Origin: Lytechinus pictus
Lineage: Eukaryota
Direction of reading: 5' to 3'
NCBI RefSeq assembly: GCF_037042905.1
Contig: NC_087248.1
Span: forward strand, 15,066,001 to 15,130,000
Length of the DNA stretch: 64,000 nt
The notes under the pieces are model-generated. The model ran no database searches and was not told where the DNA came from. It saw only the letters and a program-made list of their open reading frames with translations. Numbering within the stretch: the stretch's first letter is position 1; every line of letters begins with the position of its first letter. A program made the position numbers and the translations under genes. Shown piece after piece: positions 2,838 through 60,130 of this stretch.

Positions 2838-8382
<5,545 letters not shown>

Positions 8383-17100: not shown

Positions 17101-20100
17101 TTTTCATTGTCATAAAAATCGCACATTTCAACTAATTTTTATGCTTGAAAGGAGAGCAAATATACTGACCTTTACTAAGAGATGGAGAGATTTCATTTCT
17201 GCGTCTTCATCCCCCAGATCTCTATAGGTAACAGACAGGTTGAAGAGGGACAGTGGTGGAATGACTGAACAGCTTGCAAGAGCTTTCCTGAACTGCTGCT
17301 GTGCCATATGAGGTTTTCCCTGGTAGCAAGAGAATGAGACAAAATTCATGGTCATGCTTGCTCATTCGAGTTATCTACCGGTAAATATCCAATGTTAAAA
17401 TTCAAGAAAAAAATTAAAATACAATGGAAAATTATAGTGCCTCTTTCGTTTAGCCACTGGGCTTGATGGAATCTGATTAGTTTCTACACTGTTAAATCAC
17501 TGGGGTACACCTGAGAAACAGGTTTTTTCCCTGGTAATGTAATGTTGTAGACACTAGAACCGGTGTGTTGGGTCAGTTGGTAGAGCGTCCGTCTCACAAC
17601 CGGGAGGTCGGGGGTACAAACCCCGGCCGCGTCAGACCAAAAGACGCTAAAAGAGGGAGTTGCCCCTACCATGTTCAACAATTAAAGGGATAGAGCCTCG
17701 TCAATCTGGCGCTGCATAGCAGCTGCCAGGCCCACGATCAATTGGGCAAAGTAAATTTTCGGAGTATTACATTTCATGTCTATTTCGAACAATAAAATAT
17801 GGATTTTCATCTTTCATCTAATCAGATTCCGCTGACCACAGTGGCTGAACAAATTTGGTCCAGAATGTGGATATGGCAAAACTAAGATTTCATGTGCCAA
17901 GATTACCGAGATTTAATTTTCCAAACCAAATTAACAAAGGTTCAAAACTATTGGTGAAAATTATTCATCCTCATTTTGACGGGCAATGCCCCCTCCCCCC
18001 CTCGTTGCCAGTCCAACCTTGGATGGATAATTCCCTCCTATACTTTCTTAAATCCTGGTAAATGTCTATCTATTGATAATATTTGTCATCAGTGTTACAT
18101 CACCAATAGGAAGACAGATCTCACCATTTGCCTAAGACAGCATCCCATAAGGTTGTATACTTGGACAGAGACACCATCTTTGGAGATAATCTCAGTCAGT
18201 CGCTGACAGGCATCTAGCGCTTCAGTGAAGTTGCCATGGTGATATAGACAGAAGGCTGGAGAAGGAGATGACATCCTTGTAAAACATTTCAATTTTTTCA
18301 TTAGTTTGATTAGTATGGTAGTAATTGGGCTTGTACCCTAAATGGTTTGATTATACGCATAGGCGGTGAAAGCGGGGGGGGGGGGGGGGGGGGGGGGGTT
18401 GCCGATCCCCCCCCCCCTAAATTTGTAGTTGATAACCCTTTTTTTTTTTTGCTTGTCAATTTTGTTTCCTGCCTGGACCCCCAAAAATTTTTCAATGGTC
18501 CCCCCCTAAAATTTTGGTTGATACCTTTTTTGGGGGGTTTGTCAAAAAATTTGGGTGGTCCCCCCCTAAATTTTTTTGGCTTCCGCCGCCTATGATTATA
18601 CGAAGAAAACTACAATAAATATCATATTATACATTAATTGAAATTCACATGTATTCCAGATAATGGGCATGGAATCAAATCAAATTGCAACCAGAATGTC
18701 ACAAAAGTTCAGAAAGAGTACCTGTAAGTCTAAACTTTCATACAGAGGCTGAAAACTCAAGGGGCAGGGAAAATTTCACCACCATTTGTCAAAATGACTC
18801 TATATCAAGTTGAAGGGGAGGGGAGTAAATAAGAGAGAAATGGTATAAATACATTTTTTGGGGTCTCCTCTTCCTCTCACTTCCTTCTTCTATCTATCTT
18901 AATCCTTTTATGCTGATTAAAGGCCAAATCCATTCCAACAACAAATGGATATGGATTTTCATTTTTTTCAACTGACCTCTTATATACTGGACTTGATCCT
19001 GTAGTTGATCCGGTATAGAATGCAGCTCTTTATTGATAATCTCAACACATTTGATCCATTCTTCAGCTTGAACCAAAGAACATACTCTCAGGTAGCTTAT
19101 GATACCTCTCAACTGCATTCTGAAACCTGAAATAATAAAACAATTTATGTTATGTTATATACAACATATGGACAATAATAATTACAGTAATAATAATAAT
19201 TACAATAATAATAATAATTACAATAATAATAATAACTACAATAATAATTATAATAATAATGATAATAATTACAATAATAATAATTACGATAATAATAATA
19301 ACTATAATAATAACAGTTCTTGTATAGTGCTTATCACATTATTTTATAACATCTCCATTCCTCTGATTGATCATAAATATCTCCAAAGATGACATTGACA
19401 TACAATTGCTTGGTAATATTTAAAAAAAAAAACATTTTCTGCATGTATTTCCACAAATACATGCAAAATGCTTTGAAAGAATGTCTAGCCAAAGCTTTAC
19501 AAGAAAATGTAATTCACACACATCTTGTTGTGCACATATTCTCAATTTGCAAATATTTGGAAATGGATATAGAGCACCAATTCATGAAAGTTGTCAGAAC
19601 TAAGTAAATCATCAGCTCCAACAATTTCAGTGAAATACCAAATTTTAATTGACCAAGAAGTGCTGTTCCCTGACTGTTTCTATGGTAACCGACGATGACA
19701 ACTATAGTCAGTGTTGACCAGCTTCATTGCCATGGCCTTACCCAAATTCTCTGTTGCAGTCTGTTGTTGGTGATGAGTTGAATCTTGTGCTTGTACTCGG
19801 CTATGTCTCTGACTCTGAAAAAACCCAAGATATGAAGTATTTATCAATAAATTTATAGATAAATCAATGCAGTTAACTTAATACCACTCTTACAAATGTT
19901 GCCCCTTTTATATTTTGTTTCATCCATTCCCAGTTTTTACCATTTACTTTTGGTTTTAATACTAATTCGAATTGTTCTTGATCACTTGATCATTGAATTG
20001 TACCAGAGTTTGGGTCTAGTTTCATAAAGACATACAGTTATGGTAACTACCATGGAAACTCTGCTTTTGATTTTTGGCTACTGAGCCCTATTGTTACCAT

Positions 20101-23100
20101 CCGGGGGGGGGGGGCAGTCTAATATATTCCTGTACACATGCATGACCAAAAAAATGTGTTTAAAGGGGTGTTTTTTCAGTTTTGGACGAGGGCTTCGCGT
20201 GCCCTCTTTAAGGGTATCAAAAACACCGATTTTCAAGAAAAAGGGTGGTTTTAAAAGACTGGTCAACTGTCAATCACGGGGTCAAATGTATTTAGGGTAT
20301 GTTTTTTCCCCAAGCTTTTTCCCAGGGGTCTAATTCTGGCGACAACTTGTTTAGGGGCCAAAATGTGTAAATAAAGCCCGCGAAAAACTTGTTGAGGGGG
20401 TTATTTTGCACACAGAGAAAAAACTTGTTTAGGGGGTGTTTGGAAATAATTTGGTCAAGCATGTGTACAGCAATACATTCGACTTCGCGCACAGGAGCAG
20501 GCAGCGCACTAGTGCTAGTTTACTTTAATGTGACTGTGATGCCTTAAAAATGAAAAAAAATTGGCAAAAGCGTAGGAAAAATTTACTGAAAAAAAAAAGA
20601 TCAAAATTTTGCAAAGAAATATGCTGCAAATTTCTCTCCCACCTCCTGGACCCTAGTAAACAGCTAATGCAAGCCGGTCGAGCCATGTCGGCCAGCGCAG
20701 CATAATCGCACACAATATTATGCACTAGCACAGCAAACAGATGTCGACTTTTTCCAATGAGGCATTGCGAGAATTTTGGCCTGTCCATTGCAACCGATAG
20801 ATGGCGCACCAAATTAGGTGAGAGTATCATGGAAAACTTTAGAAGTATATTTCAATGCTATAAATACCTAAACTACATGGACCACAGAAACTTAAAGAAC
20901 ATCAATTTTGCAGGAATGTCAGCATGACATAATAATATACCTCATCATTTGTCTGTAACATCTGTTCTATATAGCCAAGCTGAAGTTCCACGGACCATCT
21001 TTGTAGTAAACAGCATGATATCCACATCAAACCCAAGAGAACTACTTTATTTCCAACACCATTCAAATCTATCATGAAAAAAAAAACGATATCTAGTATT
21101 GTTCGTTAGCCATTTTCTTGTTCCCTATAAAAAATAAATAAATCATGATAAAAATTTCTAACCAATAAGAAGATTCAATTTGATTTGATACAATTTATTT
21201 TTAATACCATATTCAATTCTTAAAATAACAATACAAAACATATGAAAGATTTCATAACCAAATTAACAAATGAAAATGAAATGGAGAACTACAAGGTACA
21301 TATATAAAACCACAAGGCCTCGTACAATTTTACAGTTTCCAAACAAAACATCAAACTCAGGAGAACTACTTGATTTCCAACACCATTCAAATCTATCATG
21401 AAGAAAAAACGATATCTAGTATTGTTCGTTAGCCATTTTCTTGTTCCCTATCAAAAAATGAATAAATAAATAAATAAATCATGATAAAATTTCTAACCAA
21501 TAAGAAGATTCAATTTGATTTGATAAAATTTATTTTTAATACTATGGGGAACTTGGTCGCCCGCGCGAAGTGCTACAATACGCGCGACCGTGCGTGCGAC
21601 CATGCCCCCCAGAAACCCTCCATACGTACGCAGAATCAGGATCCCAAGATCAGACGCATTCTCACGTTCAGCTCTCGATCAGTACAGTACTACAGTCTAC
21701 TACGTATACGTCCCTCAAGTTCACACGAGTCATCAGGTTCTACGACAAGTCTACTTACAAGTTCTACGACAAGCTCTATATACTTACAAGTCATCGAAGT
21801 CTTCATCCTTTGTAAGATTAAGACGGATTGACCCAGGATTAAGGTGAGTATATGGTTCTCGGTAATCCAGCTTACTTTATTTAGGTTAACATCCATATAG
21901 TCAGTTTACTATATATTGGCGCTGCGTATGAACACGACTCTGCGCTAGTTTTGTAAATGCAGTAAAAAAAGCGGCGCAGAAAACTAAATTGGCTAGACAT
22001 CGTTTTAAGTGCTTAAAAGTAGGGAAAAGTGTACCGTAGGGCGGCAAAGTAAATCGCACTCTTTATAAATTGTTTAAACTTTTGATTCAATCCGCCGTCC
22101 TACAGCGATATAGATCTGTATTATAGTTATCTTAAACAAATAATAGCAGTGTTTTAGGGCTTATTCTCAGCGTTTTTGCGTAGGTTTTAAACCCTTACAC
22201 TATCCCCTTAACCCGGTTTAAATTTTGGGTGTGGCAGGACGCCACGTAGGGCACGCCATTTATGCAAATAGCGTTAAACGTTTTCTATTGTTCGCCGCTC
22301 CCCGCATTCTATTGTGTGTTAGGGCTGAATGTATGCCTTGCCTGAGAGTTGCTTGGGGTGTGGTTCTGGCGATGATTTTGTATGTACCCCCTTTCCCTGT
22401 TAGGATTTAATTAAATTAGGATTTGAATTTTGATGTAGGATAATTAAATTTAGGAATTGTACGTAACTGAGATATATATTTATTGTTGAATTTGGCTGTT
22501 GGTGATTTAATGATTGCGTGATTGGTGAAAGATCGTATTGCTTAACCTGACTTTCCCCCCTTTAGCTGTAGCAGACGACGAGGAATCTACGTACGTTGAG
22601 TAGTTGAGTTATGATGATTCTGTATATGCCGTTCTTGATTCGTGAGGTCGTGTATTGATATTACGAGTGAAAACGAATTTTGACCATTTCTTATACAGAT
22701 TTTCCCGTCTTGCAGTAATCATTTTTTGGCGCCAGTTAGGTTGCCGTTTTACGGATTTATTCGGCGCCGTTTAGATTGCCGTTTTGCATATAGGGAGGAT
22801 TTTACTATTGCCGTTTTATAGGTGCGTGAAGTCTGAATTATACCGTGACTTTTTTGTATGGAATTATCCTAGTGTTATCTGGCTAAAACGGAGTTACCCT
22901 CATACGACTTTAGTACGTCGGGTTTCTCTTGTGGACTTTATTTAATGATCAATTTGATTTCATCTCGGTATTAAGATATCATCTCAAAAAAAAAAAATAA
23001 ATAAATAAATAAATAAAAATAAAAATAATAAAATAAGGAGTGATTGATATATTTTATATGCCGTTGCAAGCCACCAATGCTTATATTTAGAGTGGCATTA

Positions 23101-26100
23101 AGCTACAAATTTTAGTGGATGGTATTTATATTAATTAATTACTTAGTCAGTTGGTGAATACTTAGAGTATTTTTTGGAGCTTGAACATAAGTCTGGGGAC
23201 TCGACCAATTATATTATATTGGCCTAACTTGTCTTCGGATTTAGTGAATATACTCATTGATTCCCGTCACGTACATTGGTGACGCTCGTATTTCGGACAA
23301 TTATTGTGCTAATTTTATTTTAGGACTGAAAGTTAACTTTTGACTTTGTATTTTTATAATACGGTCCGTCTCATTATAATCCGACGCTACTTGCGTTAGT
23401 GTAGTTCCAAAAAACTCTCTCGTACTTAATCTGTTCAGACTTCCGTACACCCGTTGGGAATTTATTTAGAGAAAAAAACTTAATAGTTTATTGGAGTTAA
23501 AGATTATATATTTTGACCGTTATAACAATCTCTGGCCACCGGTAGTTTGTTGCAAAGTCGCACCTGCTGTCAATTAAAAGTACAACGATATTATTAATAG
23601 GGCCTTTGTGGATTGTTTAAGCTGATCTGGAGTAAGGATTTTGCTGGATCGTTTGGAGGTTTATACTTTGGAGTTCTTTAGGACAGAAATTTGTACTTAA
23701 CTTAGTTAATACTAGAACTTCTTGTTATTTCTATTGAATTTATTCGAGAAAAGAAATACTTATGTCAATTTTGCTTTGAAAACAAAAAAATACTTATATA
23801 AATTTTGCTTTGAATAAAGAAGAAAATAAAATTTTCATTCGGTTCTGAGATAGAAAGTTTTGAATCTGTAATTCGAGTTTATATAGGAAAGAATTATTCC
23901 AAACAAATTTGACTTTGAGATATAATATTTTAGAACTTCCATCTAATTATAAGAGCATAGGGTGCTTGTAATTTATTTCGGTATTCTTAGTTTATATCAG
24001 TATTTGGTCATTTTCTTTGGTCATCGACAAGCAAGGTCATTTTTAGTTTTTAATTATCTGAAGGGTGTTTTCAGTATACAAAGCTTATAGATAAGGGATA
24101 AGCAAAGTATATATATATACGCCCGAAGATAATTTAAACTTTTGTGTCAGCAGTGGAGGCATTTTCCACTTAGTACACATATAGGTGCTGGGTGCACCTG
24201 GTTAGCTCAGCATCGGAGTAGAGGCTAGTGTTTTATTTTCGGTATATTTACACATTTGTACTTTAATAATATAGGCCTCATATTGGCCATATCAGAGCTT
24301 TAAACCTTTGATAAATTTTAATAATTAGGTTTTCCAAACAAACTTAGTTTTTAGTTGTTGTTGTTTAGCTCTCTGGTAAGATTGATGATTGAAAGTGATC
24401 AATCCTATTTGGTGGTGATCACTGATCAGTGATAATTCTGATTTTCGAAGGAGCTTTACTCAGTACTTAGGTGCTTGTTAGCGTAAGATAGAACTTTCAA
24501 AATTTAGTCACCCTTCCTCGAATCATGTCCAAGATTCAAATTAATTGTTGTGAACCAGAGGAGCTATTGAAGGTCCCAGGAATTGGTAGTACTTTGGCCG
24601 AGCGAATATTGGTCCTCCGAGAGGCTAATGATATTACGATGGAAACTTTCTTAGATATTCCGCACATACGTAATGCCTCTGAGATTGCAGGGTATTTTGA
24701 TTTTGCCCCTTATGCTGTTTTAGAATCTGGCACAAATTCTACCGATTCTATTGAGGAAAGAGTGATAGTAGGCCCTGCTGCGGCAGGTGATGTAGCAGCA
24801 CAGGGCGATGAGCAGCCAACCCAATCCCCCTCTCCCTACCCTTTTGAATCCTATCCTCAAGATTCGTTGCCAGGACATCTTAAAATAGTAATGGGGAGAG
24901 AGAGTGGAGAGTCAGGGGCTGCCAGCTCACGCAGAGATAAGGTAGCTAGAGGCAATTCGCCCTCACGGAAGCATGTGGTTTTCTCTTCGCCGCGAAAACG
25001 CACACCCCCACCGAGGGAAGGTGAGGATGATGGGCTTTCTTCCCCTATGAAGTCACCCTCAAGTGACCAGGCCAGTCCTAGGTCATCTAGGGATCATGCT
25101 AACCCACCAAGGGGTAGCCACGGGTCACCTATATCTCGGTCACCCACATCTGGTCGCCACAACAGCCGCCGTGGATCACCACGTACAAACCGCCGGGATA
25201 GTCGATTTGATTCTCCTTTTCGGGATTATGGTGGGCGCCGACAAGGGTCACCTAGAGGTCACAGGCGGGATCGATATGATCATAGTAGGGATCGTTATGA
25301 TCGGAGTAGGGATCGTTATGATTGCAGTAGGGATCGATATGACTACTATAGGAACAGGTATCGCTATTCCCCTCGCCGATATCGAAATGACCGTTATGAT
25401 TCTCCCCCACGATATTATAGGGGTAATCACAGTCCGTGTAGAGGTCGTGATGATTGGCATAGGTCAAACTCTAACCGTTCCCACTCGCCTGACCATGGCC
25501 CTCGTAGGTCATCATCCCCCCGAAGAACACAAGACCACAATAGGCGGGATGCAAGACAGTCAAATGAAGACGTAGCAGTTGATTTATCATCGCGTGTTTT
25601 GCAATCACTATTTGCCATCAACCGTGCCCCTGAAACGCAGGCCCCCCAATCCCAAGAGCATGATTTCGAGTCCCACAACCCACCACCGGTACGAAGATCC
25701 TTAAGTACCAGTACAGGGGAAGGGGACAGACCCCGACTGGTTTCGGTGCCAAAGTCCATAACCTTTAACGGTACGGGCAGCTGGCAAGCCTTCATTGCGA
25801 AGTTTAAATTATTCGCCAGTGAGAATGGGTGGGACGCCAAACAATCGCGTAATTACTTATGTTGGACGTTAGATGGGGAGGCTAGCTCCTATTTAGCCAC
25901 GCTTCTTGAGCGAGAGCCCGATATGCCATATAACATTATGGTGAATAGGATGGAAAAGAGGTTCACACTTAAAGAAATGCCTGAGGTATCGCAAATGAAT
26001 TTCTCTTATGCAAGACAGGCCCCTGACGAGAATGTCACCAAGTGGGCTGCTCGGTTGCTTACCTTAGCCTCTCAGGCTTTTCCTAATTTGCCCGAGGCAT

Positions 26101-29100
26101 ATGTGCAGCAGCAGGTAGTGATGCGTTTCTGCCAGGGCTCCGCAGATAAGGAAGCTGGGCAACATGCACTCAATTCCAGACCTAAGACTGTGGAAGAGGC
26201 TGTTGATCTTGTTAAATGGTATCAACACTCACACCGAGCTATTTATGGGAAACCGCGCAGGGAGGTTAAACATGTCTCCTTGTCTGAAAAGACCCCCCTT
26301 GAACCAACCGCAAGGCAGGTGAGTGCGCCCCATACTTCCCCAGCGTATACCGTTTTAGAGCGAAGGGTTTCCGCTTTAGAAGGGAAGATGGACTCTGCAC
26401 TAAAGCAATTGGAAGCACTTGGGTCTTTGCCGGCTACTGTTCAAAGCCTAGCTGAGAGTGTAAAAAAGTTAGTAGTTTCTCCTCGTGGTAGAGGCAGAGC
26501 ATCTCCTGCCCGAGGGAATATGTCACCGGGTCGTATTGGTGCCTGCTTCCACTGTGGAAAGTCTGGACACTTCAAGAACGAGTGTCCAGAACGAGGCCCC
26601 CGACCGAGCGTTTCCTTTGTCTGTGAAGTTTTGGGAAACGATTCGGGATCGGAGGAGGAGGTCCGACCCCGATCCCACTAAAAGCGGACCCCAATTCTAA
26701 TTTGGATTCCGAAAATGCCAAAGTACTTTTACAGGATTCGCTCTCTCAAGAGGAGCAAGAAACAGATATATCCTTGGTAGTACTTGAGGCTAACAGGTCG
26801 TTGGATAGCAAAGACTCTCTTCCCAGAGGAAGTAAGGAACTGGGTGTTCCCTCTCCTGAATTGATTGTTAAAGAATCCGAACTGAGAGATGGCGGTCAGG
26901 ACGGTATTGGTATCACTGAAGGGTCAGGGAAAGTTCCGAGTGTCAAGGAACTCTCCTCTCCACCCCCCATCAGCCAGGTGATTGATACGCCTAGGCCTCC
27001 ATTGGAGCCCAGCCCCTGGTTGGTACCCCCCTGGCCACCCCCTGAAGAGGATCCGCAATTAGATAGCTGGATCCTGAAGGACCTCGAACAGGCCTCGGAC
27101 GTTGTAGTCTGCCGGATAAAGTCATCATCTACTTATAGCATAAATATATTGGTCGGTAACCAATTGATGCGTGCCGTAATCGATACTGCTGCAGAGGTGA
27201 CTATAATGTCTGATAAAATCTACCATGCACTACGCCCCGCTCCTCCAGTTATTAGGTCAGTCGTCCTAAATACAGCTGGAAGAAATATGAGTATGACTGG
27301 AATAATTGTAGGACCGGTTGATATGACCCTAGGTGGCCAGACGTTTAGTGAATGCGTCTATGTTGCCCCGATAGACGATGATATGCTGCTTGGAGCTGAT
27401 CTCCTCAAGAAGCACAGTGCATTCATCAATATACCGGATTCCTTGTTAATCTTTCAGGGCGAGTGCATTACCATGACTTGTGGTGAAGACACTGATACCT
27501 CTCAGGTTTTCGTTTCAAATTCTGTGACCATCCCCCCAATGTCAGTCAAACGAGTACAATGCGAACTTGATTCTTCTTGCACGTTTGACCAGTTTATGGT
27601 AGAGCCGGATGTTGCCCTTATAGGATTGGTTCCCCGCACATTGCATTCTGGGAGTAGCTCTATACAGTTATATGCTGTGAATGCTACTGATGTTTCCATC
27701 CATTGGGATAAAGGTCAACACCTTGGACAGGCTTCTCGCGTAGGTTCTAGAGAACCCCCCGACTTTGACAATCCTATTCCAAGTGTCAGCCAGGTTGACT
27801 TGACTGGGGATGCCAAAATCCCCACCCATTTGGAAGATCTTTGGAAACGATCTTCGGAACACTTAATTCCTGAACAGCAAGGAATATTAAAGGGCTTGTT
27901 GCTAGAATTTGAGGGTGTCTTTGCCCGGGATGAATTCGACTTGGGTAATTTCACAGCCATTACCCATTCAATCGACACAGGCGAAGCTACGCCCATCAAG
28001 CAAAAGATGAGGCGTACACCCATGAACTTTGTTCAAGAGGAGCGAGCATGTCTTAACAAAATGCTGTCCGCCGGGGTGATCCAACCTTCGATGTCGGAAT
28101 GGGCGTCCGCCCCTGTCTTAATCCGAAAACGGGACGGTAGCGTCCGTTGGTGTATAGACTATCGTAAACTTAACAACGTTACGAAGAAAGATGTCTACCC
28201 GCTTCCTTGCATCGAAGAGTGTTTGGATACCTTAGCAGAGAATTCATGGTTCTCCAAACTAGATGCAAATTCTGCCTATTGGCAAGTCAATCTCAGGCCG
28301 GAAGACCGTGAAAAGACAGCATTTATCACCAAGTATGGTTTATACGAGTTTGTTCGCATGGGCTTCGGCTTATGTAATGCCCCAGCCACGTTCTCTCGAG
28401 CAATGAATCTCATCCTCAGGGGATTGAACTGGGATATCGCTTTAGCCTTCTTGGATGATGTTGTAGTGCTCGGCACCTCTTTCTCTGATCACGTCACTAA
28501 CATCAGACAGGTGTTGGAACGATTTAGGGACTTTAAGCTTAAGTTGAAGCCAAAGAAATGTTCCTTCTTCCAACGTCGGGTAGAGTTTCTTGGTAGAGAG
28601 GTTGATGGGAATGGTCTCCACCTTAAGGAAGAGCATGTTCAAGCCGTAGTGGACTGGCCCACCCCTAAGTCCACAAAGGAGGTGGAACGGCTCCTCGGAC
28701 TTGTAAATTATCACCGTGTCTTCCTTAAAGACTATGCCCAGGTTGTAGGGCCACTATATGGCCTCACTGGGAACAATGACTTCCGCTGGGAGGACCAGCA
28801 TCAAGTGGCTTTTGAGGAAGTCAAGAGGCTCATGACCACCGCCCCTATCCTCGCACTACCCAACTCCACGGATCCGTTCATTCTGGATACCGATGCGTCT
28901 GGCACAGCTATTGGGGCTGTTTTAACCCAAGTCCAACAGGGGCAAGAGCGAACTATTGCATATGGCAGTTTTTCCCTGACCCCTGAACAACGACGCTATT
29001 GTGTAACCAGGCGTGAGCTGTTGGCAGTGGTACGGTTTACCCGCCAGTATAGGCATTACCTCCTCGGAAAACCTTTTACAGTTCGCACGGACCATGGGAG

Positions 29101-32100
29101 TCTGACATGGTTAATGAACTTTAGGGAGCCTCAAGGGCAGCTTGCCCGGTGGCTCGAAGAACTGGGCCAATATGATATGGCAGTTGAACACCGCCCTGGC
29201 AAGAAACATCAGAATGCCGATGCATTGTCTCGTATACCCGACGGCGACTTTACATGTGAGAACTACCGTCTGGGTATTGACCCCAAGAGTTTGCCCTGTG
29301 GTGGTTGTGCATACTGCCTGAAGGCCCACACAGACTGGGCACACTTCACTGATGCTGTGGACAATGTGATCCAATTGGCACAAAGGAGTAAAGTTTCGGA
29401 AGTTACCCTTGACCCCGGAGAATCGGAGGACCTCTTTATCACTCACCTGGATATTGGTCCAATCGACGGTCCATTCTCTTTTAGGGTCAACGGGGTAACC
29501 CATGATGCCGGGTCTGGTATCGACCTCACCTCAATGGACTTTCTTCGGAAAGAACAAGAGGCTGATGGTCAACTGACCCCCTTGCGCAAATGGCTGCTCG
29601 ATAAAGAGGAACCAGACGAGGGAACTGTTCTTCTGTGGGACCCCGCTGGAAAGTTCCTATGGGTCAACCGAGAGCTGTTTGTGCTTAAGGATGGTGTCAT
29701 TTGGCGTAAAGGCGATGACAATCTCCTACTTGTAGTGCCCAAGTCTTTGCGTACTGAAGTGATCAAGCTAAATCATGATCCTCCTTCAGCAGCTCATGCT
29801 GGTGTGAACCGTACTAAAGGTAAACTTCGGTCCAAATACTACTGGTATGGTATGTCGGGCGACATCCAAGAGTATATTCGGAGATGTGCCGTCTGTAATA
29901 AAAATAAGAAAGCCGTGAGGTATGGGAAACACCCCATGATAACTTATCATGCGGGGGCCCCGATGGAACGTGTACACCTCGATTTCATGGGTCCTTTACC
30001 CAAAACCTCACGAGGTAACGTGTACATCTTGATGATGGTGGACCAGTTCACCAAGTGGGTTGAGTGTGTCCCACTGCCCTCTCAGACAGCGGAAGTAACT
30101 GCTCAGGCAGCCATTAGCGAGTTCTTTTGCCGCTTTGGCTATCCATTCCAGATTTTTACTGATCAGGGCAGAAATTTTGAGAGCAGGTTATTCACGAACA
30201 TCTGTAAACTGCTCCATATACATAAGGCTAGGACTTCCCCGTACCGACCTTCCGCAAACGGCCAGGTTGAACGTTTCAACCGAACCTTAATGGATGCGGT
30301 AAGGTGCTACATTGGGAAGTCCCAGACTCATTGGGACCACAACCTCGCCCAGATCGCTGGAGCGATTCGTTCCACGATCAACCGTAGTACGGGATTCACG
30401 CCCAATCAATTGATGCTGGGGCGTGAAACTAATCAACCAGCGGAGCTGATTTTTCCACTTCCCCCATCCGTCTCTGACCGACCTCTGGATGAATATTCAT
30501 CTCAGAGCATCCGAGAGGCGCACGATGCTGCGAGAGCCACCCTCCGGAATACACAGCGACGGTTGAAGCGGGATTACGACATAAAGGTATACTTGCGGCA
30601 ATTTAAAGAAGGGGACCGAGTATACCTTCTCGCCAAGGCGACCCCCAAGGGAAAATGCAAGAAGCTGCAATCTCCCTGGAAGGGTCCGGCTATTATCGTG
30701 AAGCGATATACCCCTTATGTATACCGGGTGATCTATCGGAACAAGGCCCTGACTGTAAACCATGACCAGCTCAAAAGGTGCCTTGACGAGGCCAAGCCCT
30801 CAGGCCCTGACTGGAGGAAGGAAAGGTATTGCTACTGTAGAACCCCCGACGATGGATCGTTCATGATTCAATGTGATGGGTGCGATGAGTGGTTCCATGG
30901 TGCATGTGTTGGTGTTACCCATGCGGAAGGAATGTCTATTGACAAGTATTTTTGTCCTTTTTGTAGCTGTGGGTAACCCATTTCCTTTTCTCTTTTCAGA
31001 TGGATGAGCTAGAACTCCACGCCGAGTCAACCTTCGAGGTGGAAATGGACACCCGGCCCCCCTCTACCCCCCCAGAGGCTATCCCTCCAGAGGCTGCCTG
31101 GCAAGCAGAAATAGATGCACGGATGGGCCCAATCCCGCCCCCTGGCAGTAGACAAAAACGTACGTGGCTCCGTAAGTTGCGTCGATTACGGAGTCGGTTA
31201 AGGGCAGGGTCCAGGGATTCCCCTAATTCCCTAAAGGAAACTCCCGGTCCTGCCCCTGTCATGATGAAGGGCGTTAAGCCATCCAAAGGAATGGGGAGGG
31301 GGAGAGGGTTTGCAAGGGTCCGCAAGGGTCCCATAACACCCGGCACGCCCGGTACTTTCCATAGTAAGGGGAGAGGGAGGGGTCTCTTGAATTACCTCAA
31401 CCGAGAAGATTTCTCTTTAATGGATGCCCCCGCCCCTGCTCCGAGCTCCCATCCCCCGCCTCTGCTAGGGTTTGATAGCCATTTTCACCCAGACAGGTGT
31501 GGTTGGTACAGTAAGAGAAAGGGGAAGAGCGTGGTGACAAAGCACCCGGTAGAGATAGTCGGAGGGGTCCTGAACTTCTGTGACCCAGAGTTCTTTATGG
31601 ACCCCGGCTTTCTTTCCCGGGTGCTGGCTCACAGCCCCCCATACAACAAGAGGGACGGGAGCTGGAGATTAGCAGTAGGGATACACCCTAAACAGGCCTC
31701 GCAGTACACCGAAGATCAGTGGCAGCGTTTGGTTGCCCTACTTCAAAGCCCCTTGGTTGTAGGCGTAAGCGAACTGGGCTTTGACTTTTCTGTCAACTCC
31801 CAGTGGTGGCCTGACCAGGAAGCGCTCTTTCTGCGACTTCTTGGTCAGGGCACCCAAGGGAGGGTCCTTATCCTTCACCTAAGGGGTGATTCGAAGAATA
31901 ATACCGCGTACGCGGCGCACACTTTGGCCCGCCGGCTTCTTGCAAAGCACTGCTCCCCACTCCAAAGGATACACATCCATAACTTCTCCAGCGATGCTTT
32001 GCAAGCCGGGAAATGGATCGCTGCCTTTCCATATTGCTATTTCGGTATTGCCGGGATGGCAGCGTACTTCACAACAGAACAAATTCAAGGCCTTAGGGCC

Positions 32101-35100
32101 GTCCCCGCGGATCGGCTAATTCTGGAGACCGATGCTCCGCATCTCCCTCCTCGCCCGGACATGACGGTGACTTCACCTGAAAGCCTGGGTGATGTGGGGG
32201 CGGTGGTAGCCAACCTGCGGGGGCAGCCCTTGGCCACTATAATGGCCCAAGCCACATACAATGCAAAACTACTGTATGGCCTGTTAGGGTAATAGGGTAT
32301 GTTATTCATTTTTTTGGTGGCCCCTGTCTCATGTTTTATTTTTCTGTCCAAAATCTTGCCCTTCCTACTTTGGAAGTTAATTAAAAGATAAAGTCGCGGC
32401 CTATCCATGTAATTGAGGGGTCTTAGGTTCTTCTCTTCTGCGATGCAGTATTTTCTCTCTCCGGAGAACGTTTCTATTCTGTATCGTGGCGGAGAAGGAC
32501 TGAGAAGTTTTCCCAACGTACCGGGCCGAACTAGACCAGATTTTACATTCCCAAGTGGAAAGTGTCTGTTGGCTGTCATCTTTCGGACCCTCCTTAGTCT
32601 TCAGGGACTGGTAAAGGTTGCGGACTCTTATATTCCATAAAGCCCAAGGGACATTGGTTTAGTTTTTTGAAATATTGTGCCAACTTGTGTCGCACGTAAA
32701 GTTATATATCCAGGTGATATTATATTTATTCCAACCGTGGTGCCAAAATACGTCACAAGTGAGTTTATAAATTTCTTTACATACTATCCAGCGGATATAG
32801 GTTTGGTTTTCAAAGACAATATTGTGCCAAGTTGTGTCACACAAAGTTTTTTAGTTATTTCAACCATTGTGCCGAATGACGTCACAGGTAAAATTATACA
32901 TTTCCTTTAATGATATCCAGGCGATATGGTCTTCAATTTAGTTTTAAAGTCTGCTGGCCAAGCAAGGCTTATTACTTGGTTATCATCCTCCAAAGATTGG
33001 GGATTGAGATTTGGGGCCATCCATATTTTTTTGTGTGTAAATAGTCCTTTTCACGCATGAACTACATGAACTACATGCTTAGTAGCTCGTAACCTAAAGA
33101 CATGTATACATATATATGTATATGTTCAATAAAGTTTTTTGAGGGTCTGTTTAATGCCCACGAGTATAGGGAAAGAAACCTAAATTTCCTTAGTATATGT
33201 TTTCGTGATATTTCCGAGATACTGGGAAGTAAATAGTTCCTTTCAGGGGTCTAGGACGAGTGTTTTTATTCTTGGTACTACATGTACCGGTTTATTGTTA
33301 CTTTTTTGTCCACTCCTCAGACCTATCTTTATATCTACATGAGTGATTAGGAAAGTACAGTTAATAATCAATCTCCCCTTTATTTTTACGGTTGGGGGGA
33401 ATATGGGGAACTTGGTCGCCCGCGCGAAGTGCTACAATACGCGCGACCGTGCGTGCGACCATGCCCCCCAGAAACCCTCCATACGTACGCAGAATCAGGA
33501 TCCCAAGATCAGAGGCATTCTCACGTTCAGCTCTCGATCAGTACAGTACTACAGTCTACTACGTATACGTCCCTCAAGTTCACACGAGTCATCAGGTTCT
33601 ACGACAAGTCTACTTACAAGTTCTACGACAAGCTCTATATACTTACAAGTCATCGAAGTCTTCATCCTTTGTAAGATTAAGACGGATTGACCCAGGATTA
33701 AGGTGAGTATATGGTTCTCGGTAATCCAGCTTACTTTATTTAGGTTAACATCCATATAGTCAGTTTACTATAATACCATATTCAATTCTTAAAATAATAA
33801 TACAAAACATATGAAAGATTTCATAACCAAATAAAAAAATGAAAATGAAAAGAACTACAAGGTACATATATAAAACCACAAGGCCTTGTTCAAATTTACA
33901 GTTTCCAAACAAAACAAAAATGACAGTTTATTCAAATGATTCACCAGAGCTCTGACAATGTTTTGAACAATAATAGTAGGTAGTGTATTACTTATCAAGA
34001 AAATTACTGCCATCATACTTGACATATGAATCACAAAGAAAGACACAAATAGTGTAACTATCAAGAAAACCACGACCAAGAAAATATGTGAAAGATATTG
34101 AATTCAAGCGACTGATTATGATTGTGTAGCTAGTTTATTGTCTAGCTAGTGACTTCAAATCTCCATAATTTTATTTGCAGGAATTTTTGGGGGCCGACAA
34201 GAATTTGATATGGAGGCTTGTTTCATACTGTATAGTAATTTTTTACAAATGTTACAAATATATTCTAGAGTAAGTAGAGTAGGCCTACTGTGAATGATAT
34301 TATAAGATAACGTCTCTGCATCTGAAAGGCACGGTATATAGTAAGTTTAATAGAAGCATACTTTTAATATAATTTTTATGTTGAATTTACCTGACGATTT
34401 AATTGAAATCTTCTGAATCATGATGGTGATGTCATCTTCTTGTGGAGCCTCCTCACCATACAAAAACCTGTAGACTGAAAGAAAAAAGTTTAGGTTTGAC
34501 AGTGTCCAATTCACATTCAATAGACTTTCTTGATAAATATACAAACCCATGCTAAATATGTTGAGCCCCCCCCCCCCTTCAGCAAAAAAAAAAAATCAAT
34601 CAGGGTCAAGAGTTTTAAATCACTTCTATGAGTATAACCAGGAGAAATGCTCTTTATTTAAAAAAAATAGATAGAATTAATTCACACACCCTCCATCTAA
34701 AGAAAAATAAAATGAATAAATCAAACTACACTTTTTCAATTAAAAAAGAAAACAATCAGAAATAAATTAATGTTCTTTTACAATTCTCAAGAAATTACAT
34801 ATTTTTATATTTCAAAAACATAATGGAAGGGCAAATGAAAATTCAATGTTGGCCGAGTTTCATTTGAAACCCCCCTTTTGTGCTTGACTTGAATCATTAC
34901 TATTTTGTTCAATTGTTGGATGCTTTACCACTAAAACCAACCCATTGCAGCGGGTCCCTCTATATGCTTTCCTCAGCTTACCTCTTCTGAAGGCTTGGTT
35001 GATCATCGGGCGACTTAACCCTACCAGACCATCCGGTCCATGCTCGCCTGATCTTCTTAGATTGTTAATCGCATGTTTGCATGTTGCACTGAGAACAGTC

Positions 35101-38344: not shown

Positions 38345-38719
38345 ATGGCAAATACACTATCCATAAGAGAGAAATACAAAGCCAGACATACGCTGGTTTG
38401 TCTTCTTCGTGCAGTAGTTGGCCGTATCACAACTGTGGAACTCAGAAATGAATGTTCAGCGACTGGCTATGTGGATGACGTCGATGGTTTTATGAATGTG
38501 ACAATGTCCAAGGTTCTGTTCGTGAACATGGATGGAGAGAAAACGCACATGGACTCGTTCTTCGTCCAGGCAAGCCTTGTTCGCTATGTGCAAATTCCAG
38601 ATGACATCAACATGGTGAAGGCTATGAAGCGGCAGTTGATGTCGATGAATCCCCAAAAACCAGCACCAGGGAGTATGTCAGGAGGCCGCAAGAAACCACC
38701 ATTAAAGCTTTGTGACTGA
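38345..38719 (+). CDS. LSM10: U7 snRNA-associated Sm-like protein LSm10
   Basis: Single-exon 124-aa ORF; TLVCLLRAVVGRITTVELRNE..GYVDDVDGFMNV (Sm1) and FFVQASLVRYVQIPD (Sm2) match LSm10. Confidence 0.92.
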   Translation: MANTLSIREKYKARHTLVCLLRAVVGRITTVELRNECSATGYVDDVDGFMNVTMSKVLFVNMDGEKTHMDSFFVQASLVRYVQIPDDINMVKAMKRQLMSMNPQKPAPGSMSGGRKKPPLKLCD

Positions 38720-58589: not shown

Positions 58590-60130
58590 TATATAAGGCA
58601 AATCACAAAATGTAGGGACCAGACGTAAGTTTTTTCTTAAGTTTTTTCTTAAAGTTATTCAAAGTTGATGCATTTCTGATGTCTGTAGGTAAATTGTTCC
58701 ACTTTTTTGGACCTATAAAACGAATATTATGTTGATAAGAACAAATCCTGTGTCTTGGCAAATGAATCAAAGAAGAGGAGCGTGTATTGTATTTATATAA
58801 ATTATGATTTGTATCAAACAATACAGAAAAATTAGCAGGCATAAGCCGATTGATACACTGATAAATAAAACACATTGTTGGTAGGTTGTAATTTCTTCCG
58901 TAAAGTAAGCAGTTTAAACTCTGAGTGTAATGTATCAACTTTAGATCTTGGGCTTGCTCCAGCTATGATTCTAACTGTTTTATTTTGTTTTGTAACAAGT
59001 TTCTTTATAGGTTAGACGGAAAAGTACTACCCCAAACTAAGTTACAGTAAGACAAATATGGCAATATGAGTGTGGAATACAACATTCGCAATATATAAGC
59101 TGGTAAAAAGTAACTTAATCTGGATATAATACCAATATTCTTTGATATTTTCTTCTCTATATTTTGTATGTGAAATTTCCTAGTTAATTTTGAATCAATG
59201 GTTACACCAAGAAATTTTGTTTTTTCAACTTTAGGAATCTCAATGCTATTCATTTGTAATTTAAAACAATCAGTGTCATATTGCTTGTTACGATTACTGA
59301 AAAAATGAAGTTACACTTACGGGGGTTGACAGATAGCCTATTTGCCTGGAACCACATGCACAGTTTAGAGAGATTATCATTTACTTGTCCTTGCAAGGAA
59401 GTTAAATCTTTACCACTAAACAGTATATTTGTATCATCAGCATATAGTATGAATGATGGGATATTTGACACATTTGCAATATCATTTATGTACAATATAA
59501 ATAACAAAGGCCCTAACAAGGACCCTTGCGGAACTCCACACACAATTTTCTTAGGTTCTGACAAGCAGGTATTATATTTAGTACATTGAAATCGATTGGA
59601 GAGGTAGCTACTAAACCAACTATGTTCTATTCCTCGAATCCCGTAGTGTTTTAGTTTAGCTAACATGATCTCATGATTTATAGTGTCAAAAGCCTTTGAC
59701 AAATCAACAAAAACACCAACAAGAAAAGAATTACGTTCAAACGCGTCTACATTCTTCTTTACGATATCAGTAAGAGCCATACTTGTTGAATATTTGTTTC
59801 GGAAGCCATACTGATAGCTACCCAAAATATTACATTTATCTAGGAACTTGACAGTGCGTTTATAAACAATCTTTTCCAAAACCTTTGAAAAACAAGATGG
59901 AACAGATATAGGACGGTAGTTCGATAATTCACATTTATCACCACTCTTAAATACAGGAGTTACCCGAGCAATTTTTAGGTTTATCTGGAAAGATTCCCTT
60001 CGAAAGAGATAAATTAAATATATGGCACAGAGGTTTAAAAATTTCTTTTATTATACACTTTATGACACGTGAACTAAAATCATCAATTCCAGAAGCTGTA
60101 TTATTCTGAAAGGTGTTTACAATACTGCAT
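58590..60130 (-). pseudogene. 5'-truncated, frameshifted CR1/L2-group LINE reverse transcriptase
   Basis: NYRPISV..SKVLEK, QYGFR, VDLSKAFDTINH, GVPQGSLLGPLLF, YADDT, KFLGVTID, YCNLVWG. Confidence 0.9.

What the first reader, a model, noticed from the sequence alone, without database searches (positions are those of the whole stretch)
30827..30973. Integrase ends in a PHD finger of the H3K4me3-reader type, where chromoviruses have a chromodomain
Seen: YCYCRTPDDGSFMIQCDGCDEWFHGACVGVTHAEGMSIDKYFCPFC is a full C4-H-C3 finger right after the GPY/F-like motif (WKGPA). It keeps the Tyr before Cys1, the Met in MIQC and the Trp in EWFH. Established: those positions form the methyl-lysine cage in BPTF/DIDO/CXXC1/PHF2-type PHDs; PHDs in retroelements are better known from LINE ORF1 and BEL/Pao Gag. 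Inference: integration is steered toward active chromatin. This copy lies in a housekeeping-gene intron, with a pre-insertion site ~4 kb from the FANCG/LSM10 promoter.
Basis: partly seen in the sequence, partly recalled or inferred. Interest (0 to 1): 0.8.

Follow-up and report, generated by a model that had tools for sequence, protein, structure and literature searches.

The report
Sea-urchin retrotransposon integrase ending in PHD finger
A young, intact gypsy-type retrotransposon in a sea-urchin genome has an integrase ending in a zinc finger of the kind that reads the active-promoter mark H3K4me3, a trait shared by a large group of marine-invertebrate elements and likely, though unproven, to guide where they insert.

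Summary
Window 30827-30964 (+) encodes a complete C4HC3 PHD finger (Pfam PF00628, E=1e-9) as the last domain of a 1424-aa Pol. It follows the integrase GPY/F-like module after a roughly 15-24-residue poorly conserved linker.

Its closest solved relatives by sequence and predicted fold are all H3K4me2/3 readers: Cfp1, PHF2, BPTF, DIDO1, PHF8/KDM7A, TAF3 and Spp1. The Tyr-Met-Trp cage triad is present. Across 108 homologues, Met and Trp are invariant and Tyr/Phe is 97%. The fourth wall is Asp here.

The host element (21543-33772) is a 12.2-kb Ty3/gypsy retrotransposon of Lytechinus pictus. It has near-identical LTRs, a 4-bp target duplication and open gag, pol and a third ORF encoding a TatD nuclease. 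It is absent from the orthologous L. variegatus site. At least four more ~99% identical copies exist.

The PHD marks a sublineage found in echinoderms and molluscs. The nearest PHD-less relatives carry no chromodomain.

Histone binding and promoter-directed integration remain inference, and five insertion sites show no clear pattern. The "intron" claim is not shown.

PHD-retrotransposon fusions are already surveyed in the literature, so I rate this a new variant of a known kind.

The parts
21539..21542 (.). Target-site duplication, 5' copy (ATAC)
   Evidence: The same 4 bases flank both ends. The uninterrupted site is visible in a paralogous ~330-bp tandem-repeat unit at ~21202.
21543..21913 (+). 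5' LTR (371 bp)
   Evidence: 99.7% identical to the 3' LTR, with 1 mismatch.
21914..24524 (+). Long AT-rich leader with no ORF; a TGG-initiated primer-binding-like site begins 3 nt after the LTR
   Evidence: No ORF of 62 aa or more on the + strand. The sequence after the LTR was read.
24525..26681 (+). gag (718 aa): N-terminal helix-hairpin-helix (24531-24632), PNMA-like capsid region, CCHC knuckle (26541-26591)
   Evidence: Pfam HHH_3 E=5.6e-6, PNMA E=2e-3, zf-CCHC E=3.3e-5.
26633..26639 (+). GGGAAAC heptamer in X_XXY_YYZ register of the gag frame, inside the gag/pol overlap (26627-26681); probable -1 frameshift site
   Evidence: Sequence and frame arithmetic. Function is inferred.
26702..30976 (+). 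pol (1424 aa): protease 27143-27412, RT 28121-28597, RNase H 28787-29173, integrase zinc domain 29735-29911, integrase core 29957-30250, GPY/F-like motif 30671-30691
   Evidence: Pfam hits gag-asp_proteas, RVT_1 (E=9.5e-31), RT_RNaseH (E=1.6e-32), Integrase_H2C2 (E=1.2e-19), rve (E=1.9e-15). Motif position.
30782..30826 (+). Linker between the integrase C-terminal module and the PHD finger
   Evidence: Low conservation: mean pairwise identity 0.31, against 0.56 for the PHD. AlphaFold pLDDT is below 50 at the start of the model, which corresponds to this stretch.
30827..30964 (+). PHD finger (C4HC3) of the H3K4me2/3-reader type; three residues and the stop codon follow
   Evidence: Pfam PF00628 E=1e-9. 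PDB sequence hits include Cfp1, PHF2, BPTF and DIDO1, down to E=4e-15. Foldseek gives BPTF rmsd 1.4 A over 51 columns and DIDO 1.1 A over 52. The eight zinc ligands plus Met and Trp are invariant in 47 aligned sequences.
31000..32292 (+). ORF3 (430 aa) encoding a TatD-family metal-dependent nuclease (domain 31471-32280)
   Evidence: Pfam PF01026 E=3.9e-29, covering the whole profile. Best PDB matches are bacterial TatD/YcfH. The same ORF follows pol in relatives.
33390..33401 (+). Polypurine tract (GGTTGGGGGGAA) abutting the 3' LTR
   Evidence: Sequence read directly.
33402..33772 (+). 3' LTR
33773..33776 (.). Target-site duplication, 3' copy (ATAC)
18894..19118 (-). Neighbour: first coding exon of a FANCG-like TPR gene; further exons lie at about 11.0-17.4 kb on the minus strand
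   Evidence: Orthologous to the start of the 600-aa TPR gene model of L. variegatus. The 13243-14145 exon hits human FANCG 7kzp_G at E=6.8e-4, the only PDB hit.
38345..38719 (+). Neighbour: LSM10 (single exon, 124 aa)
   Evidence: Human LSm10 6v4x_C E=1.9e-22. Clusters with the annotated Lytechinus LSm10.

Best explanation
The finger is a working module of the integrase of an intact, recently active Ty3/gypsy retrotransposon. It is a PHD finger of the methyl-H3K4-reading subclass, hung on a short flexible linker after the integrase C-terminal (GPY/F) domain.

The most likely mechanism is as follows. After reverse transcription, the integrase-cDNA complex is tethered through this finger to nucleosomes whose H3 tails carry K4me3 or K4me2, that is, chromatin at and just downstream of active promoters. 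This would bias target choice, in the way the chromodomain of chromoviruses tethers integrase to H3K9-methylated chromatin.

Shown here:
- domain identity, fold class and presence of the Trp/Met/Tyr cage;
- family-wide conservation equal to that of other essential integrase parts;
- clade-wide presence in echinoderm and mollusc elements;
- recent activity of this family.

Inferred, not shown:
- binding of methylated H3K4 (I put this at about 0.65);
- an effect on integration sites (about 0.45).

The Asp at the fourth cage position, shared with TAF3 and fly Cfp1, is compatible with me3 reading. It may also widen tolerance to me2.
For: Domain and subclass:
- Pfam PHD, E=1e-9.
- Every strong PDB sequence match is an H3K4me2/3 reader: Cfp1 9c0o 4e-15, PHF2, BPTF, DIDO1, PHF8, KDM7A, PPS, Spp1, EBS and TAF3.
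- The AlphaFold model has pLDDT of 87 or more over the finger. It superposes on BPTF-H3K4me3 (2f6j), DIDO-H3K4me3 (4l7x, 1.1 A), PPS, KDM7A and PHF2-H3K4me3 (3kqi).

Cage mapping:
- The alignment to BPTF gives Y10->Tyr, Y23->Met and W32->Trp.
- BPTF Y10/Y17/W32 form the cage (PMC4225485).
- Met is the conserved back wall in DIDO1 and TAF3, and losing it costs more than 100-fold in TAF3 binding (PMC8246079).
- ING2 uses a W-M-Y cage (PMC9898751).
- The Asp position matches the DIDO1 His / TAF3 Asp site (PMC8246079).

Selection:
- In 108 homologues, Met is 100%, Trp 100% and Tyr/Phe 97%.
- The only invariant columns of the finger are the 8 zinc ligands plus Met and Trp.
- Mean pairwise identity of the PHD is 0.56. 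The linker is 0.31, the integrase N-terminal domain 0.49 and the C-terminal domain 0.53.

Activity:
- LTRs are 99.7-100% identical and TSDs are 4 bp.
- All three ORFs are open in 4 of 5 copies.
- The orthologous site in L. variegatus is empty.

Precedent: reader domains fused to retrotransposon proteins are widespread (10.1101/2021.11.30.470311). A PHD-bearing Chlamydomonas Gypsy shows non-random insertion (PMC9940879).
Against: - There is no binding measurement and no genome-wide insertion map.
- The fourth cage wall is Asp in this copy, so it has three hydrophobic walls rather than four. In the family this position is D 47%, W/Y 39% and C 7%.
- The window copy sits in AT-rich, CpG-poor tandem repeat (flank CpG o/e 0.3-0.7). 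It is 2.5-3.9 kb from the nearest CpG-rich, promoter-like zone.
- The other young copies are mixed. One lies beside an NRF1-like palindrome in CpG-rich DNA, one is next to a related element, one is next to a BEL/Pao element, and one has no gene within 8 kb.
- Grau-Bove et al. argue that targeting active chromatin should be costly for a transposon.
- It is unknown whether protease processing leaves the finger attached to mature integrase.
Confidence: 0.55

Rival explanations
1. The finger tethers integrase, but to a different ligand. Candidates are an unmodified or differently modified H3 tail, or a non-histone protein whose N-terminus mimics H3. Target bias, if any, would then not be towards H3K4me3 chromatin.
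For: PHF2's PHD, one of the closest relatives, also binds the VRK1 N-terminal peptide (7m10 and 8f8y; PMC9898751). The fourth cage position is variable in the family and acidic in this copy. A BPTF variant with an acidic residue at Y17 prefers Kme2 (PMC4589357; 2ri7). The insertion contexts seen are not uniformly promoter-like.
Against: H3K4me0 readers lack the cage Trp (PMC4225485, PMC9898751). Here Trp and Met are invariant. No H3K4me0-type PHD appears among the strong hits.
Confidence: 0.2
2. The finger is functional but does not choose targets. It might instead help nuclear or chromosome retention of the pre-integration complex, integrase multimerisation or stability, or recruitment of host factors that favour expression of the new copy.
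For: Conservation shows function, not which function. The small sample of insertions shows no obvious site rule beyond a 4-bp duplication. The lineage carries other unusual accessory parts of unknown role, a TatD ORF3 and a Gag helix-hairpin-helix, which suggests an atypical replication cycle.
Against: The position, at the integrase C-terminus on a flexible linker, is exactly that of the chromodomain, for which a targeting role has been shown (Gao et al. 2008, as cited in PMC6673714). A histone-tail reader on integrase would bias target choice almost by necessity.
Confidence: 0.15
3. The finger is a neutral passenger, a recent exon capture or an assembly or annotation artefact with no role for the element.
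For: None found beyond the general possibility.
Against: It lies in one uninterrupted ORF with integrase in five copies on five chromosomes. It is present at the same position in 108 of 120 relatives from at least two phyla, with invariant ligand and cage residues.
Confidence: 0.03

Closest known systems
Chromoviruses (Ty3/gypsy elements with a chromodomain at the integrase C-terminus, e.g. MAGGY and Tf1-like elements)
   Same: Both are Ty3/gypsy elements with PR-RT-RH-IN order and a small histone-methyl-lysine reader fused after the integrase GPY/F module. The presumed role is to tether integrase to marked nucleosomes.
   Different: No Chromo hit was found in this Pol or in its nearest PHD-less relatives. 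The predicted mark is H3K4me2/3 (active chromatin) rather than H3K9me (heterochromatin). This lineage also carries a TatD ORF3.
Gypsy-7a_cRei of Chlamydomonas reinhardtii (PMC9940879), and REM1 and other Chlamydomonas PHD-bearing elements
   Same: It is an active Gypsy element whose polyprotein contains a PHD finger. Targeted insertion is suspected: intergenic insertions are 2.6 times more frequent than expected.
   Different: The PHD is listed between RNase H and integrase, not at the integrase C-terminus. The host is a green alga.
Retrotransposon-PHD fusions surveyed by Grau-Bove et al. (bioRxiv 10.1101/2021.11.30.470311), including cnidarian elements with PYGO1/2-like PHDs
   Same: These are animal retrotransposons whose RT/integrase proteins are fused to a PHD related to an H3K4me reader. 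The idea of chromatin-guided insertion is raised there.
   Different: The text describes a different PHD family (PYGO-like) in cnidarians. The echinoderm/mollusc lineage with a BPTF/PHF2/Cfp1-like finger, TatD ORF3 and HhH Gag is not described in the text I could read. The supplementary tables were not examined.
CR1/Jockey-superfamily LINE ORF1 proteins with PHD (Kapitonov and Jurka 2003; PMC4120745), and the Ginger1-9_HM DNA transposase with Ulp1+PHD (PMC2836005)
   Same: In each, a mobile-element protein has acquired a PHD finger. Ginger1 carries it C-terminal to a Gypsy-type integrase-like transposase.
   Different: These are different element classes (non-LTR, or cut-and-paste). The PHD sits in ORF1 or after a Ulp1 protease domain. 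There is no evidence that it is the same PHD subtype.
Cellular H3K4me3-reader PHDs: BPTF, PHF2/PHF8/KDM7A, DIDO1, CXXC1/Cfp1/Spp1, TAF3
   Same: 43-55% identity over ~50 residues and rmsd of 1.1-1.9 A to the crystal structures (solution structures of the same proteins align less tightly). The Tyr, Met and Trp cage positions are the same, with Asp at the TAF3/Cfp1-like position (PMC8246079).
   Different: The finger is embedded in a transposon polyprotein rather than a chromatin regulator. Which cellular PHD it derives from cannot be resolved, because scores to Cfp1, PHF2, BPTF and DIDO1 are nearly equal.

Membership tests
PHD finger (Pfam PF00628) | C4HC3 zinc-ligand pattern with canonical spacing and a score above the curated threshold | tested here: met
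   38.7 bits against a cut-off of 24, E=1e-9, profile positions 1-47 of 47. All eight ligands are invariant in the 47-sequence alignment.
PHD finger (Pfam PF00628) | Interleaved two-zinc fold with a small beta-sheet | tested here: met
   The AlphaFold model has pLDDT 87-93 over residues 21-60. Foldseek gives probability 1.00 to about 50 PHD structures, with rmsd 1.1-2.0 A to the crystal structures among them. This is a prediction, not a solved structure.
H3K4me2/3-reader subclass of PHD fingers (BPTF/PHF2/DIDO1/Cfp1/TAF3/ING type) | Invariant Trp two residues before the His ligand (BPTF W32; left wall of the cage) | tested here: met
   Aligned to BPTF W32. Trp is present in 108 of 108 homologues. 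Its role is described in PMC4225485 and PMC9898751.
H3K4me2/3-reader subclass of PHD fingers | Met (or Tyr in BPTF) three residues before Cys3, forming the back wall of the cage | tested here: met
   Met is present here and in 108 of 108 homologues. It aligns with the Met of PHF2, Cfp1 and DIDO1 and with BPTF Y23. Its role is described in PMC8246079.
H3K4me2/3-reader subclass of PHD fingers | Aromatic residue immediately before Cys1 (BPTF Y10; floor of the cage) | tested here: met
   Tyr here. In the family: Y 83%, F 14%. Aligned to BPTF Y10.
H3K4me2/3-reader subclass of PHD fingers | Fourth aromatic wall (BPTF Y17 / PHF2 Tyr). This is not universal in the subclass: DIDO1 has His and TAF3 has Asp. 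| tested here: not met
   Asp in this copy. In the family: D 47%, W 20%, Y 19%, C 7%. The position is equivalent to DIDO1 His / TAF3 Asp (PMC8246079). The feature is optional, so failing it does not exclude membership.
H3K4me2/3-reader subclass of PHD fingers | Measured selective binding to methylated H3K4 peptides or nucleosomes | not testable with these tools
   No binding data exist for this protein, and sequence and fold only predict binding.
Ty3/gypsy (Metaviridae-like) LTR retrotransposon | Direct LTRs, short target duplication, polypurine tract, gag then pol with order PR-RT-RNaseH-IN | tested here: met
Chromovirus clade of Ty3/gypsy | Chromodomain at the integrase C-terminus | tested here: not met
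   No Chromo family hit at E<=0.01 in this Pol, nor at E<=0.001 in seven of the nearest relatives. The resemblance is positional only. RT-based phylogenetic placement against reference clades was not possible with these tools.
Chromatin-mark-targeted integrating elements (functional class) | Insertion sites enriched at the mark read by the fused domain | tested here: inconclusive
   Only five young copies were inspected, with at most 0.5 kb of 5' flank and 8.5 kb of 3' flank for four of them. Contexts are mixed, and no chromatin data are available.

The most novel reading that the evidence does not exclude
This would be a large, old and still active lineage of marine-invertebrate Ty3/gypsy elements, defined by a TatD-nuclease third ORF. 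One of its sublineages has equipped integrase with a direct reader of the active-promoter mark H3K4me3. If the finger really steers integration, it would be the first retroelement shown to read an active-chromatin histone mark by itself rather than through a host adaptor. It would be the mirror image of chromoviruses. It also comes with a natural control, because PHD-less sister families are found in marine-invertebrate-derived sequence too.
Probability: 0.4. Interest if true: 0.75.

Novelty: new variant of a known kind. Interest (0 to 1): 0.55.

Why it matters
Where mobile elements land decides how much harm or regulatory novelty they bring.

Reader domains on integrases are the simplest known targeting devices, but only the heterochromatin-reading chromodomain has been studied. 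An integrase with an H3K4me3-type finger predicts the opposite preference, towards promoters and gene 5' ends. That would matter for several reasons:
- gene-regulatory evolution in echinoderms and molluscs;
- interpreting genome annotations, because NCBI currently labels this element's ORF3 copies as host 'TATDN2' genes and its Pol as an uncharacterized host protein;
- understanding how often transposons borrow chromatin readers.

The family is young and multi-copy in L. pictus, and PHD-less relatives of the same lineage exist. The question can therefore be answered with existing kinds of descriptive data.

Tried and rejected
Steps that led nowhere:
- The Rfam scan of 20-40 kb found nothing.
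- The sigma-70 promoter/terminator scan does not apply to an animal genome, and I ignored it.
- Pfam did not recognise the FANCG-like exons beyond weak TPR hits. The FANCG label rests on one weak PDB hit and on orthology to a 600-aa TPR gene model.
- Gag has no PDB sequence relative.
- The paper on the engineered BPTF finger (PMC4689580) is not held, so I cite PMC4589357 for that point.
- Literature searches for TatD with LTR retrotransposon or Gypsy gave nothing relevant.
- I did not attempt dN/dS. Within-family copies are ~99% identical and between-family copies are saturated, so I used amino-acid conservation instead.

Ideas rejected:
- Shared target repeat. The similar TTTTTAAT(A/G)C flanks of two copies suggested it, but the flanks of the five copies are unrelated to each other.
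- Chromovirus membership. No chromodomain is present.
- A reader of unmethylated H3K4. The cage Trp and Met are invariant.

Limits:
- The mini-survey of insertion contexts is too small for any statistic.
- Assignment of the finger to one cellular ancestor is unresolved.

Slips to disclose:
- In one search the script formed an unused in-memory string of the host flanks without the element. It was neither printed nor saved.
- Alignment tools printed consensus lines on their own.
Full report
OBSERVATION

It is the C-terminal end of a 1424-aa ORF, 26702-30976.

Pfam finds the following in this ORF, in order: an aspartic protease, reverse transcriptase, RNase H, the integrase H2C2 zinc domain, the integrase core, and a PHD finger at residues 1377-1421. 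The PHD hit is PF00628, E=1e-9, 38.7 bits against a curated cut-off of 24. No chromodomain is found.

The GPY/F-like motif (SPWKGPA) is at residues 1324-1330. The integrase C-terminal module ends about residue 1360, and a 15-residue linker leads to the finger.

THE ELEMENT AROUND IT

The ORF belongs to a 12,230-bp LTR retrotransposon spanning 21543-33772.
- Its 371-bp LTRs differ at one position.
- It is flanked by a 4-bp duplication, ATAC.
- A polypurine tract abuts the 3' LTR.
- It inserted into a ~330-bp AT-rich tandem repeat. A neighbouring repeat unit shows the uninterrupted site.

After a 2.6-kb leader without ORFs come three genes.
- gag (718 aa) has an N-terminal helix-hairpin-helix motif, a PNMA-like capsid region and a CCHC knuckle.
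- pol overlaps gag by 55 nt in the -1 frame. A GGGAAAC heptamer sits in the right register for frameshifting (the function is inferred).
- ORF3 (430 aa) is a full-length TatD-family nuclease (Pfam E=3.9e-29). Its closest solved relatives are bacterial TatD/YcfH.

HOST, AGE AND COPIES

The best integrase homologue, at 98% identity, is a Lytechinus pictus protein. The neighbouring LSM10 gene clusters with the Lytechinus LSm10.

The orthologous L. variegatus locus is collinear with the window on both sides but lacks the element. About 230 bp there separate sequences that are 12.8 kb apart in the window.

Exact or near-exact ORF3 proteins led to four more full-length copies on other L. pictus chromosomes.
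- They are ~99% identical to the window copy.
- Their LTR pairs are 100% identical.
- The 4-bp duplications are ATGC, AAGT and TTTT. One copy has no matching duplication.
- All three ORFs are open in four of the five copies. In one copy pol is interrupted once.

The family was therefore active very recently.

WHAT KIND OF PHD

phmmer against all PDB sequences returns PHD fingers among all 60 listed of its 71 matches. The strongest are fly Cfp1/CXXC1 (9c0o, 4e-15), PHF2, BPTF, DIDO1, PHF8, KDM7A, PPS, Spp1, EBS/SHL and TAF3. All of these are H3K4me2/3 readers.

An AlphaFold model was built from a 47-sequence alignment. Its pLDDT is 87-93 across the finger and below 50 for the linker. Foldseek matches it best to BPTF-H3K4me3 (rmsd 1.4-1.9 A over 51 columns), DIDO-H3K4me3 (1.1 A over 52 columns), PPS-H3K4me3, KDM7A and PHF2-H3K4me3.

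Through the alignment, BPTF Y10 corresponds to the Tyr before Cys1, BPTF Y23 to the Met, and BPTF W32 to the Trp. The literature held here confirms the roles of these positions.
- W32, Y10 and Y17 form the BPTF cage (PMC4225485).
- A conserved Met forms the back face of the cage in DIDO1 and TAF3. BPTF Y23 is its analogue. Removing the Met costs more than 100-fold in TAF3 binding (PMC8246079).
- ING2 uses a W-M-Y cage (PMC9898751).

The remaining wall, BPTF Y17, is not aromatic here. The loop is one residue shorter, as in Cfp1 and DIDO1, and the corresponding residue is Asp. This is the position occupied by His in DIDO1 and Asp in TAF3 (PMC8246079). An acidic residue at BPTF Y17 shifts preference to Kme2 (PMC4589357), so me2 tolerance is conceivable. 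That last point is inference.

CONSERVATION AND DISTRIBUTION

Of the 120 closest integrase homologues, 108 have the complete finger, nearly all within 0-15 residues of the C-terminus. Most of the rest are truncated models.

Across those 108:
- the Met is 100%;
- the Trp is 100%;
- the residue before Cys1 is Tyr 83% or Phe 14%;
- the fourth-wall position is Asp 47%, Trp 20%, Tyr 19% or Cys 7%.

In the 47-sequence alignment, the only invariant columns of the finger are the eight zinc ligands plus that Met and Trp.

Mean pairwise identity by region:
| Region | Mean pairwise identity |
|---|---|
| PHD finger | 0.56 |
| Linker | 0.31 |
| Integrase zinc domain | 0.49 |
| Integrase C-terminal module | 0.53 |
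| Catalytic core | 0.73 |

The finger is thus under the same kind of constraint as the rest of integrase.

Named hosts include echinoderms (Lytechinus, Acanthaster) and molluscs (Ostrea, Pinctada, Haliotis, Nucella). There are also contigs mislabelled as bacterial symbiont bins.

In an exhaustive search of 1.84 billion representatives, integrase relatives number over 100,000. Only about 15-18 of the best 150 fifty-percent clusters carry the finger. Of seven of the next-nearest relatives scanned, one has the finger on a longer linker and six have no recognisable reader domain at all, not a chromodomain. Two of those six were looked up, and both keep the TatD ORF downstream of pol. The same gag-pol-TatD order is seen in PHD-bearing relatives. 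So the TatD ORF defines a wider lineage, and the PHD was gained within it.

CONTEXT CLAIMS

LSM10 is at 38345-38719 (+).

A FANCG-like TPR gene runs on the minus strand. Its first coding exon starts at 19118, orthologous to the start of the 600-aa L. variegatus model.

The element therefore lies between the two genes, 2.4 kb upstream of the FANCG-like ATG and 4.6 kb upstream of the LSM10 ATG. It is antisense to FANCG.

The DNA around the FANCG ATG is AT-rich and CpG-poor. The only CpG-rich zone (observed/expected about 1.0) is at 36.3-38.3 kb. A 151-aa minus-strand gene model starts there at 37666 and ends inside the element. A shared bidirectional promoter with a FANCG 5'UTR intron containing the insertion is therefore possible, but it is not shown.

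Four kilobases is outside a typical H3K4me3 peak, so this copy says little about targeting.

The other copies are mixed:
- one has a GCGCATGCGC palindrome about 30 bp upstream and CpG-rich flanks;
- one abuts LTR-like sequence and the gag of a related element;
- one lies near a BEL/Pao element;
- one has no called gene within 8 kb;
- an older fragment sits in an intron of a TM9SF gene.

This sample is too small and too filtered for any conclusion.

MECHANISM

The best-supported reading is that the finger is a chromatin tether on integrase that recognises H3K4me3/me2 and biases integration towards active promoter-proximal nucleosomes. In function it would be the active-chromatin counterpart of the chromovirus chromodomain.

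Shown: identity, fold class, cage residues, constraint, clade-wide presence and recent activity. Inferred: ligand and effect on target choice.

Rivals are a different ligand (PHF2's finger also binds a non-histone H3 mimic), a non-targeting role, and a neutral passenger. The last is effectively excluded by conservation.

COMPARISON WITH WHAT IS KNOWN

PHD fingers in mobile elements are documented in several places:
- CR1/Jockey ORF1 (PMC4120745; Kapitonov and Jurka 2003, as cited in PMC6673714);
- a Ginger1 transposase (PMC2836005);
- REM1, Penelope-like and Gypsy elements of Chlamydomonas, including the active Gypsy-7a_cRei. Its PHD lies between RNase H and integrase, and its insertions are non-random (PMC8557442, PMC9940879).

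A 172-genome survey found that PHD and Chromo dominate chromatin-domain fusions with retrotransposon RT/integrase domains. It singled out cnidarian elements with PYGO-like PHDs (10.1101/2021.11.30.470311).

I found no description of this echinoderm/mollusc lineage, of an H3K4me3-type finger at the integrase C-terminus, or of TatD in LTR retrotransposons. The library does not cover subscription journals or Repbase reports.

I therefore rate it a new variant of a known kind.

Noticed in passing
window 31000-32292 (+); also the P0002 contig (no DNA was held for it), L009:12327-13169, L010:7008-10178, L011:7034-8110: The element's third ORF is a full-length TatD-family nuclease. It is closer to bacterial TatD/YcfH than to yeast TatD. 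It follows pol in both PHD-bearing and PHD-less relatives, so it marks a wider Ty3/gypsy lineage. I found no paper linking TatD to LTR retrotransposons. NCBI annotates the copies as host 'TATDN2' or 'TatD-like' genes.
   Followed up: partly
window 24531-24632 (+): The N-terminus of Gag carries a helix-hairpin-helix motif (HHH_3) just below Pfam's threshold (26.8 bits against 27). The same family is recorded for the Gag next to P0002 and in P0073. A DNA-binding motif in a retrotransposon Gag is unusual.
   Followed up: partly
window 26627-26681, heptamer 26633-26639: gag and pol overlap by 55 nt in the -1 frame. A GGGAAAC heptamer sits in X_XXY_YYZ register, as expected for programmed -1 frameshifting. 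No downstream structure was analysed.
   Followed up: no
L003:548-12785, L004:555-12793, L005:523-12786, L006:556-12804: There are four further full-length copies on other L. pictus chromosomes. They are ~99% identical to the window copy and their LTR pairs are 100% identical. Three have 4-bp target duplications and one has none. All ORFs are open except pol in one copy, which is interrupted once. The family looks currently or very recently active.
   Followed up: yes
L003 about 30-45 bp upstream of the insertion (L003:~500-520): A GCGCATGCGC palindrome (NRF1/P3A2-like) lies just upstream of this copy. The flanks have CpG observed/expected of about 0.85-1.1, which is promoter-like DNA, but no gene is called within 8 kb downstream.
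   Followed up: partly
L004:12794-18600: The 3' flank of this copy starts with LTR-like sequence and, 3.5 kb on, has a 676-aa RS-rich Gag-like ORF followed by a Pol-like start. This copy therefore sits beside or inside a related element. It is also the one copy without a matching target duplication.
   Followed up: partly
window 33071-37666 (-): A 151-aa gene model of the L. pictus annotation starts in the CpG-rich zone next to LSM10 and ends inside the retrotransposon. Its first exon codes for nothing recognisable. It may reflect a bidirectional-promoter transcript, or a FANCG 5'UTR, now terminating in the element.
   Followed up: partly
window 20900-21542 and 33773-33920: The insertion site is an AT-rich tandem repeat with a period of about 325-335 bp. 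L. variegatus has homologous sequence at the orthologous position.
   Followed up: partly
window 3585-4553 and 8029-8382 (+): These are exons of an NSUN-type RsmB/F RNA methyltransferase gene.
   Followed up: no
window 49923-50390 (+) and 59250-59879 (-): These are reverse-transcriptase fragments of non-LTR (LINE-like) elements.
   Followed up: no
proteins P0015, P0033, P0041, P0114: Pol proteins of this animal retrotransposon clade are deposited as proteins of bacterial metagenome-assembled genomes (Sedimenticola, and Candidatus Thiodiazotropha symbionts of clams). This almost certainly reflects host-DNA contamination of those bins.
   Followed up: no
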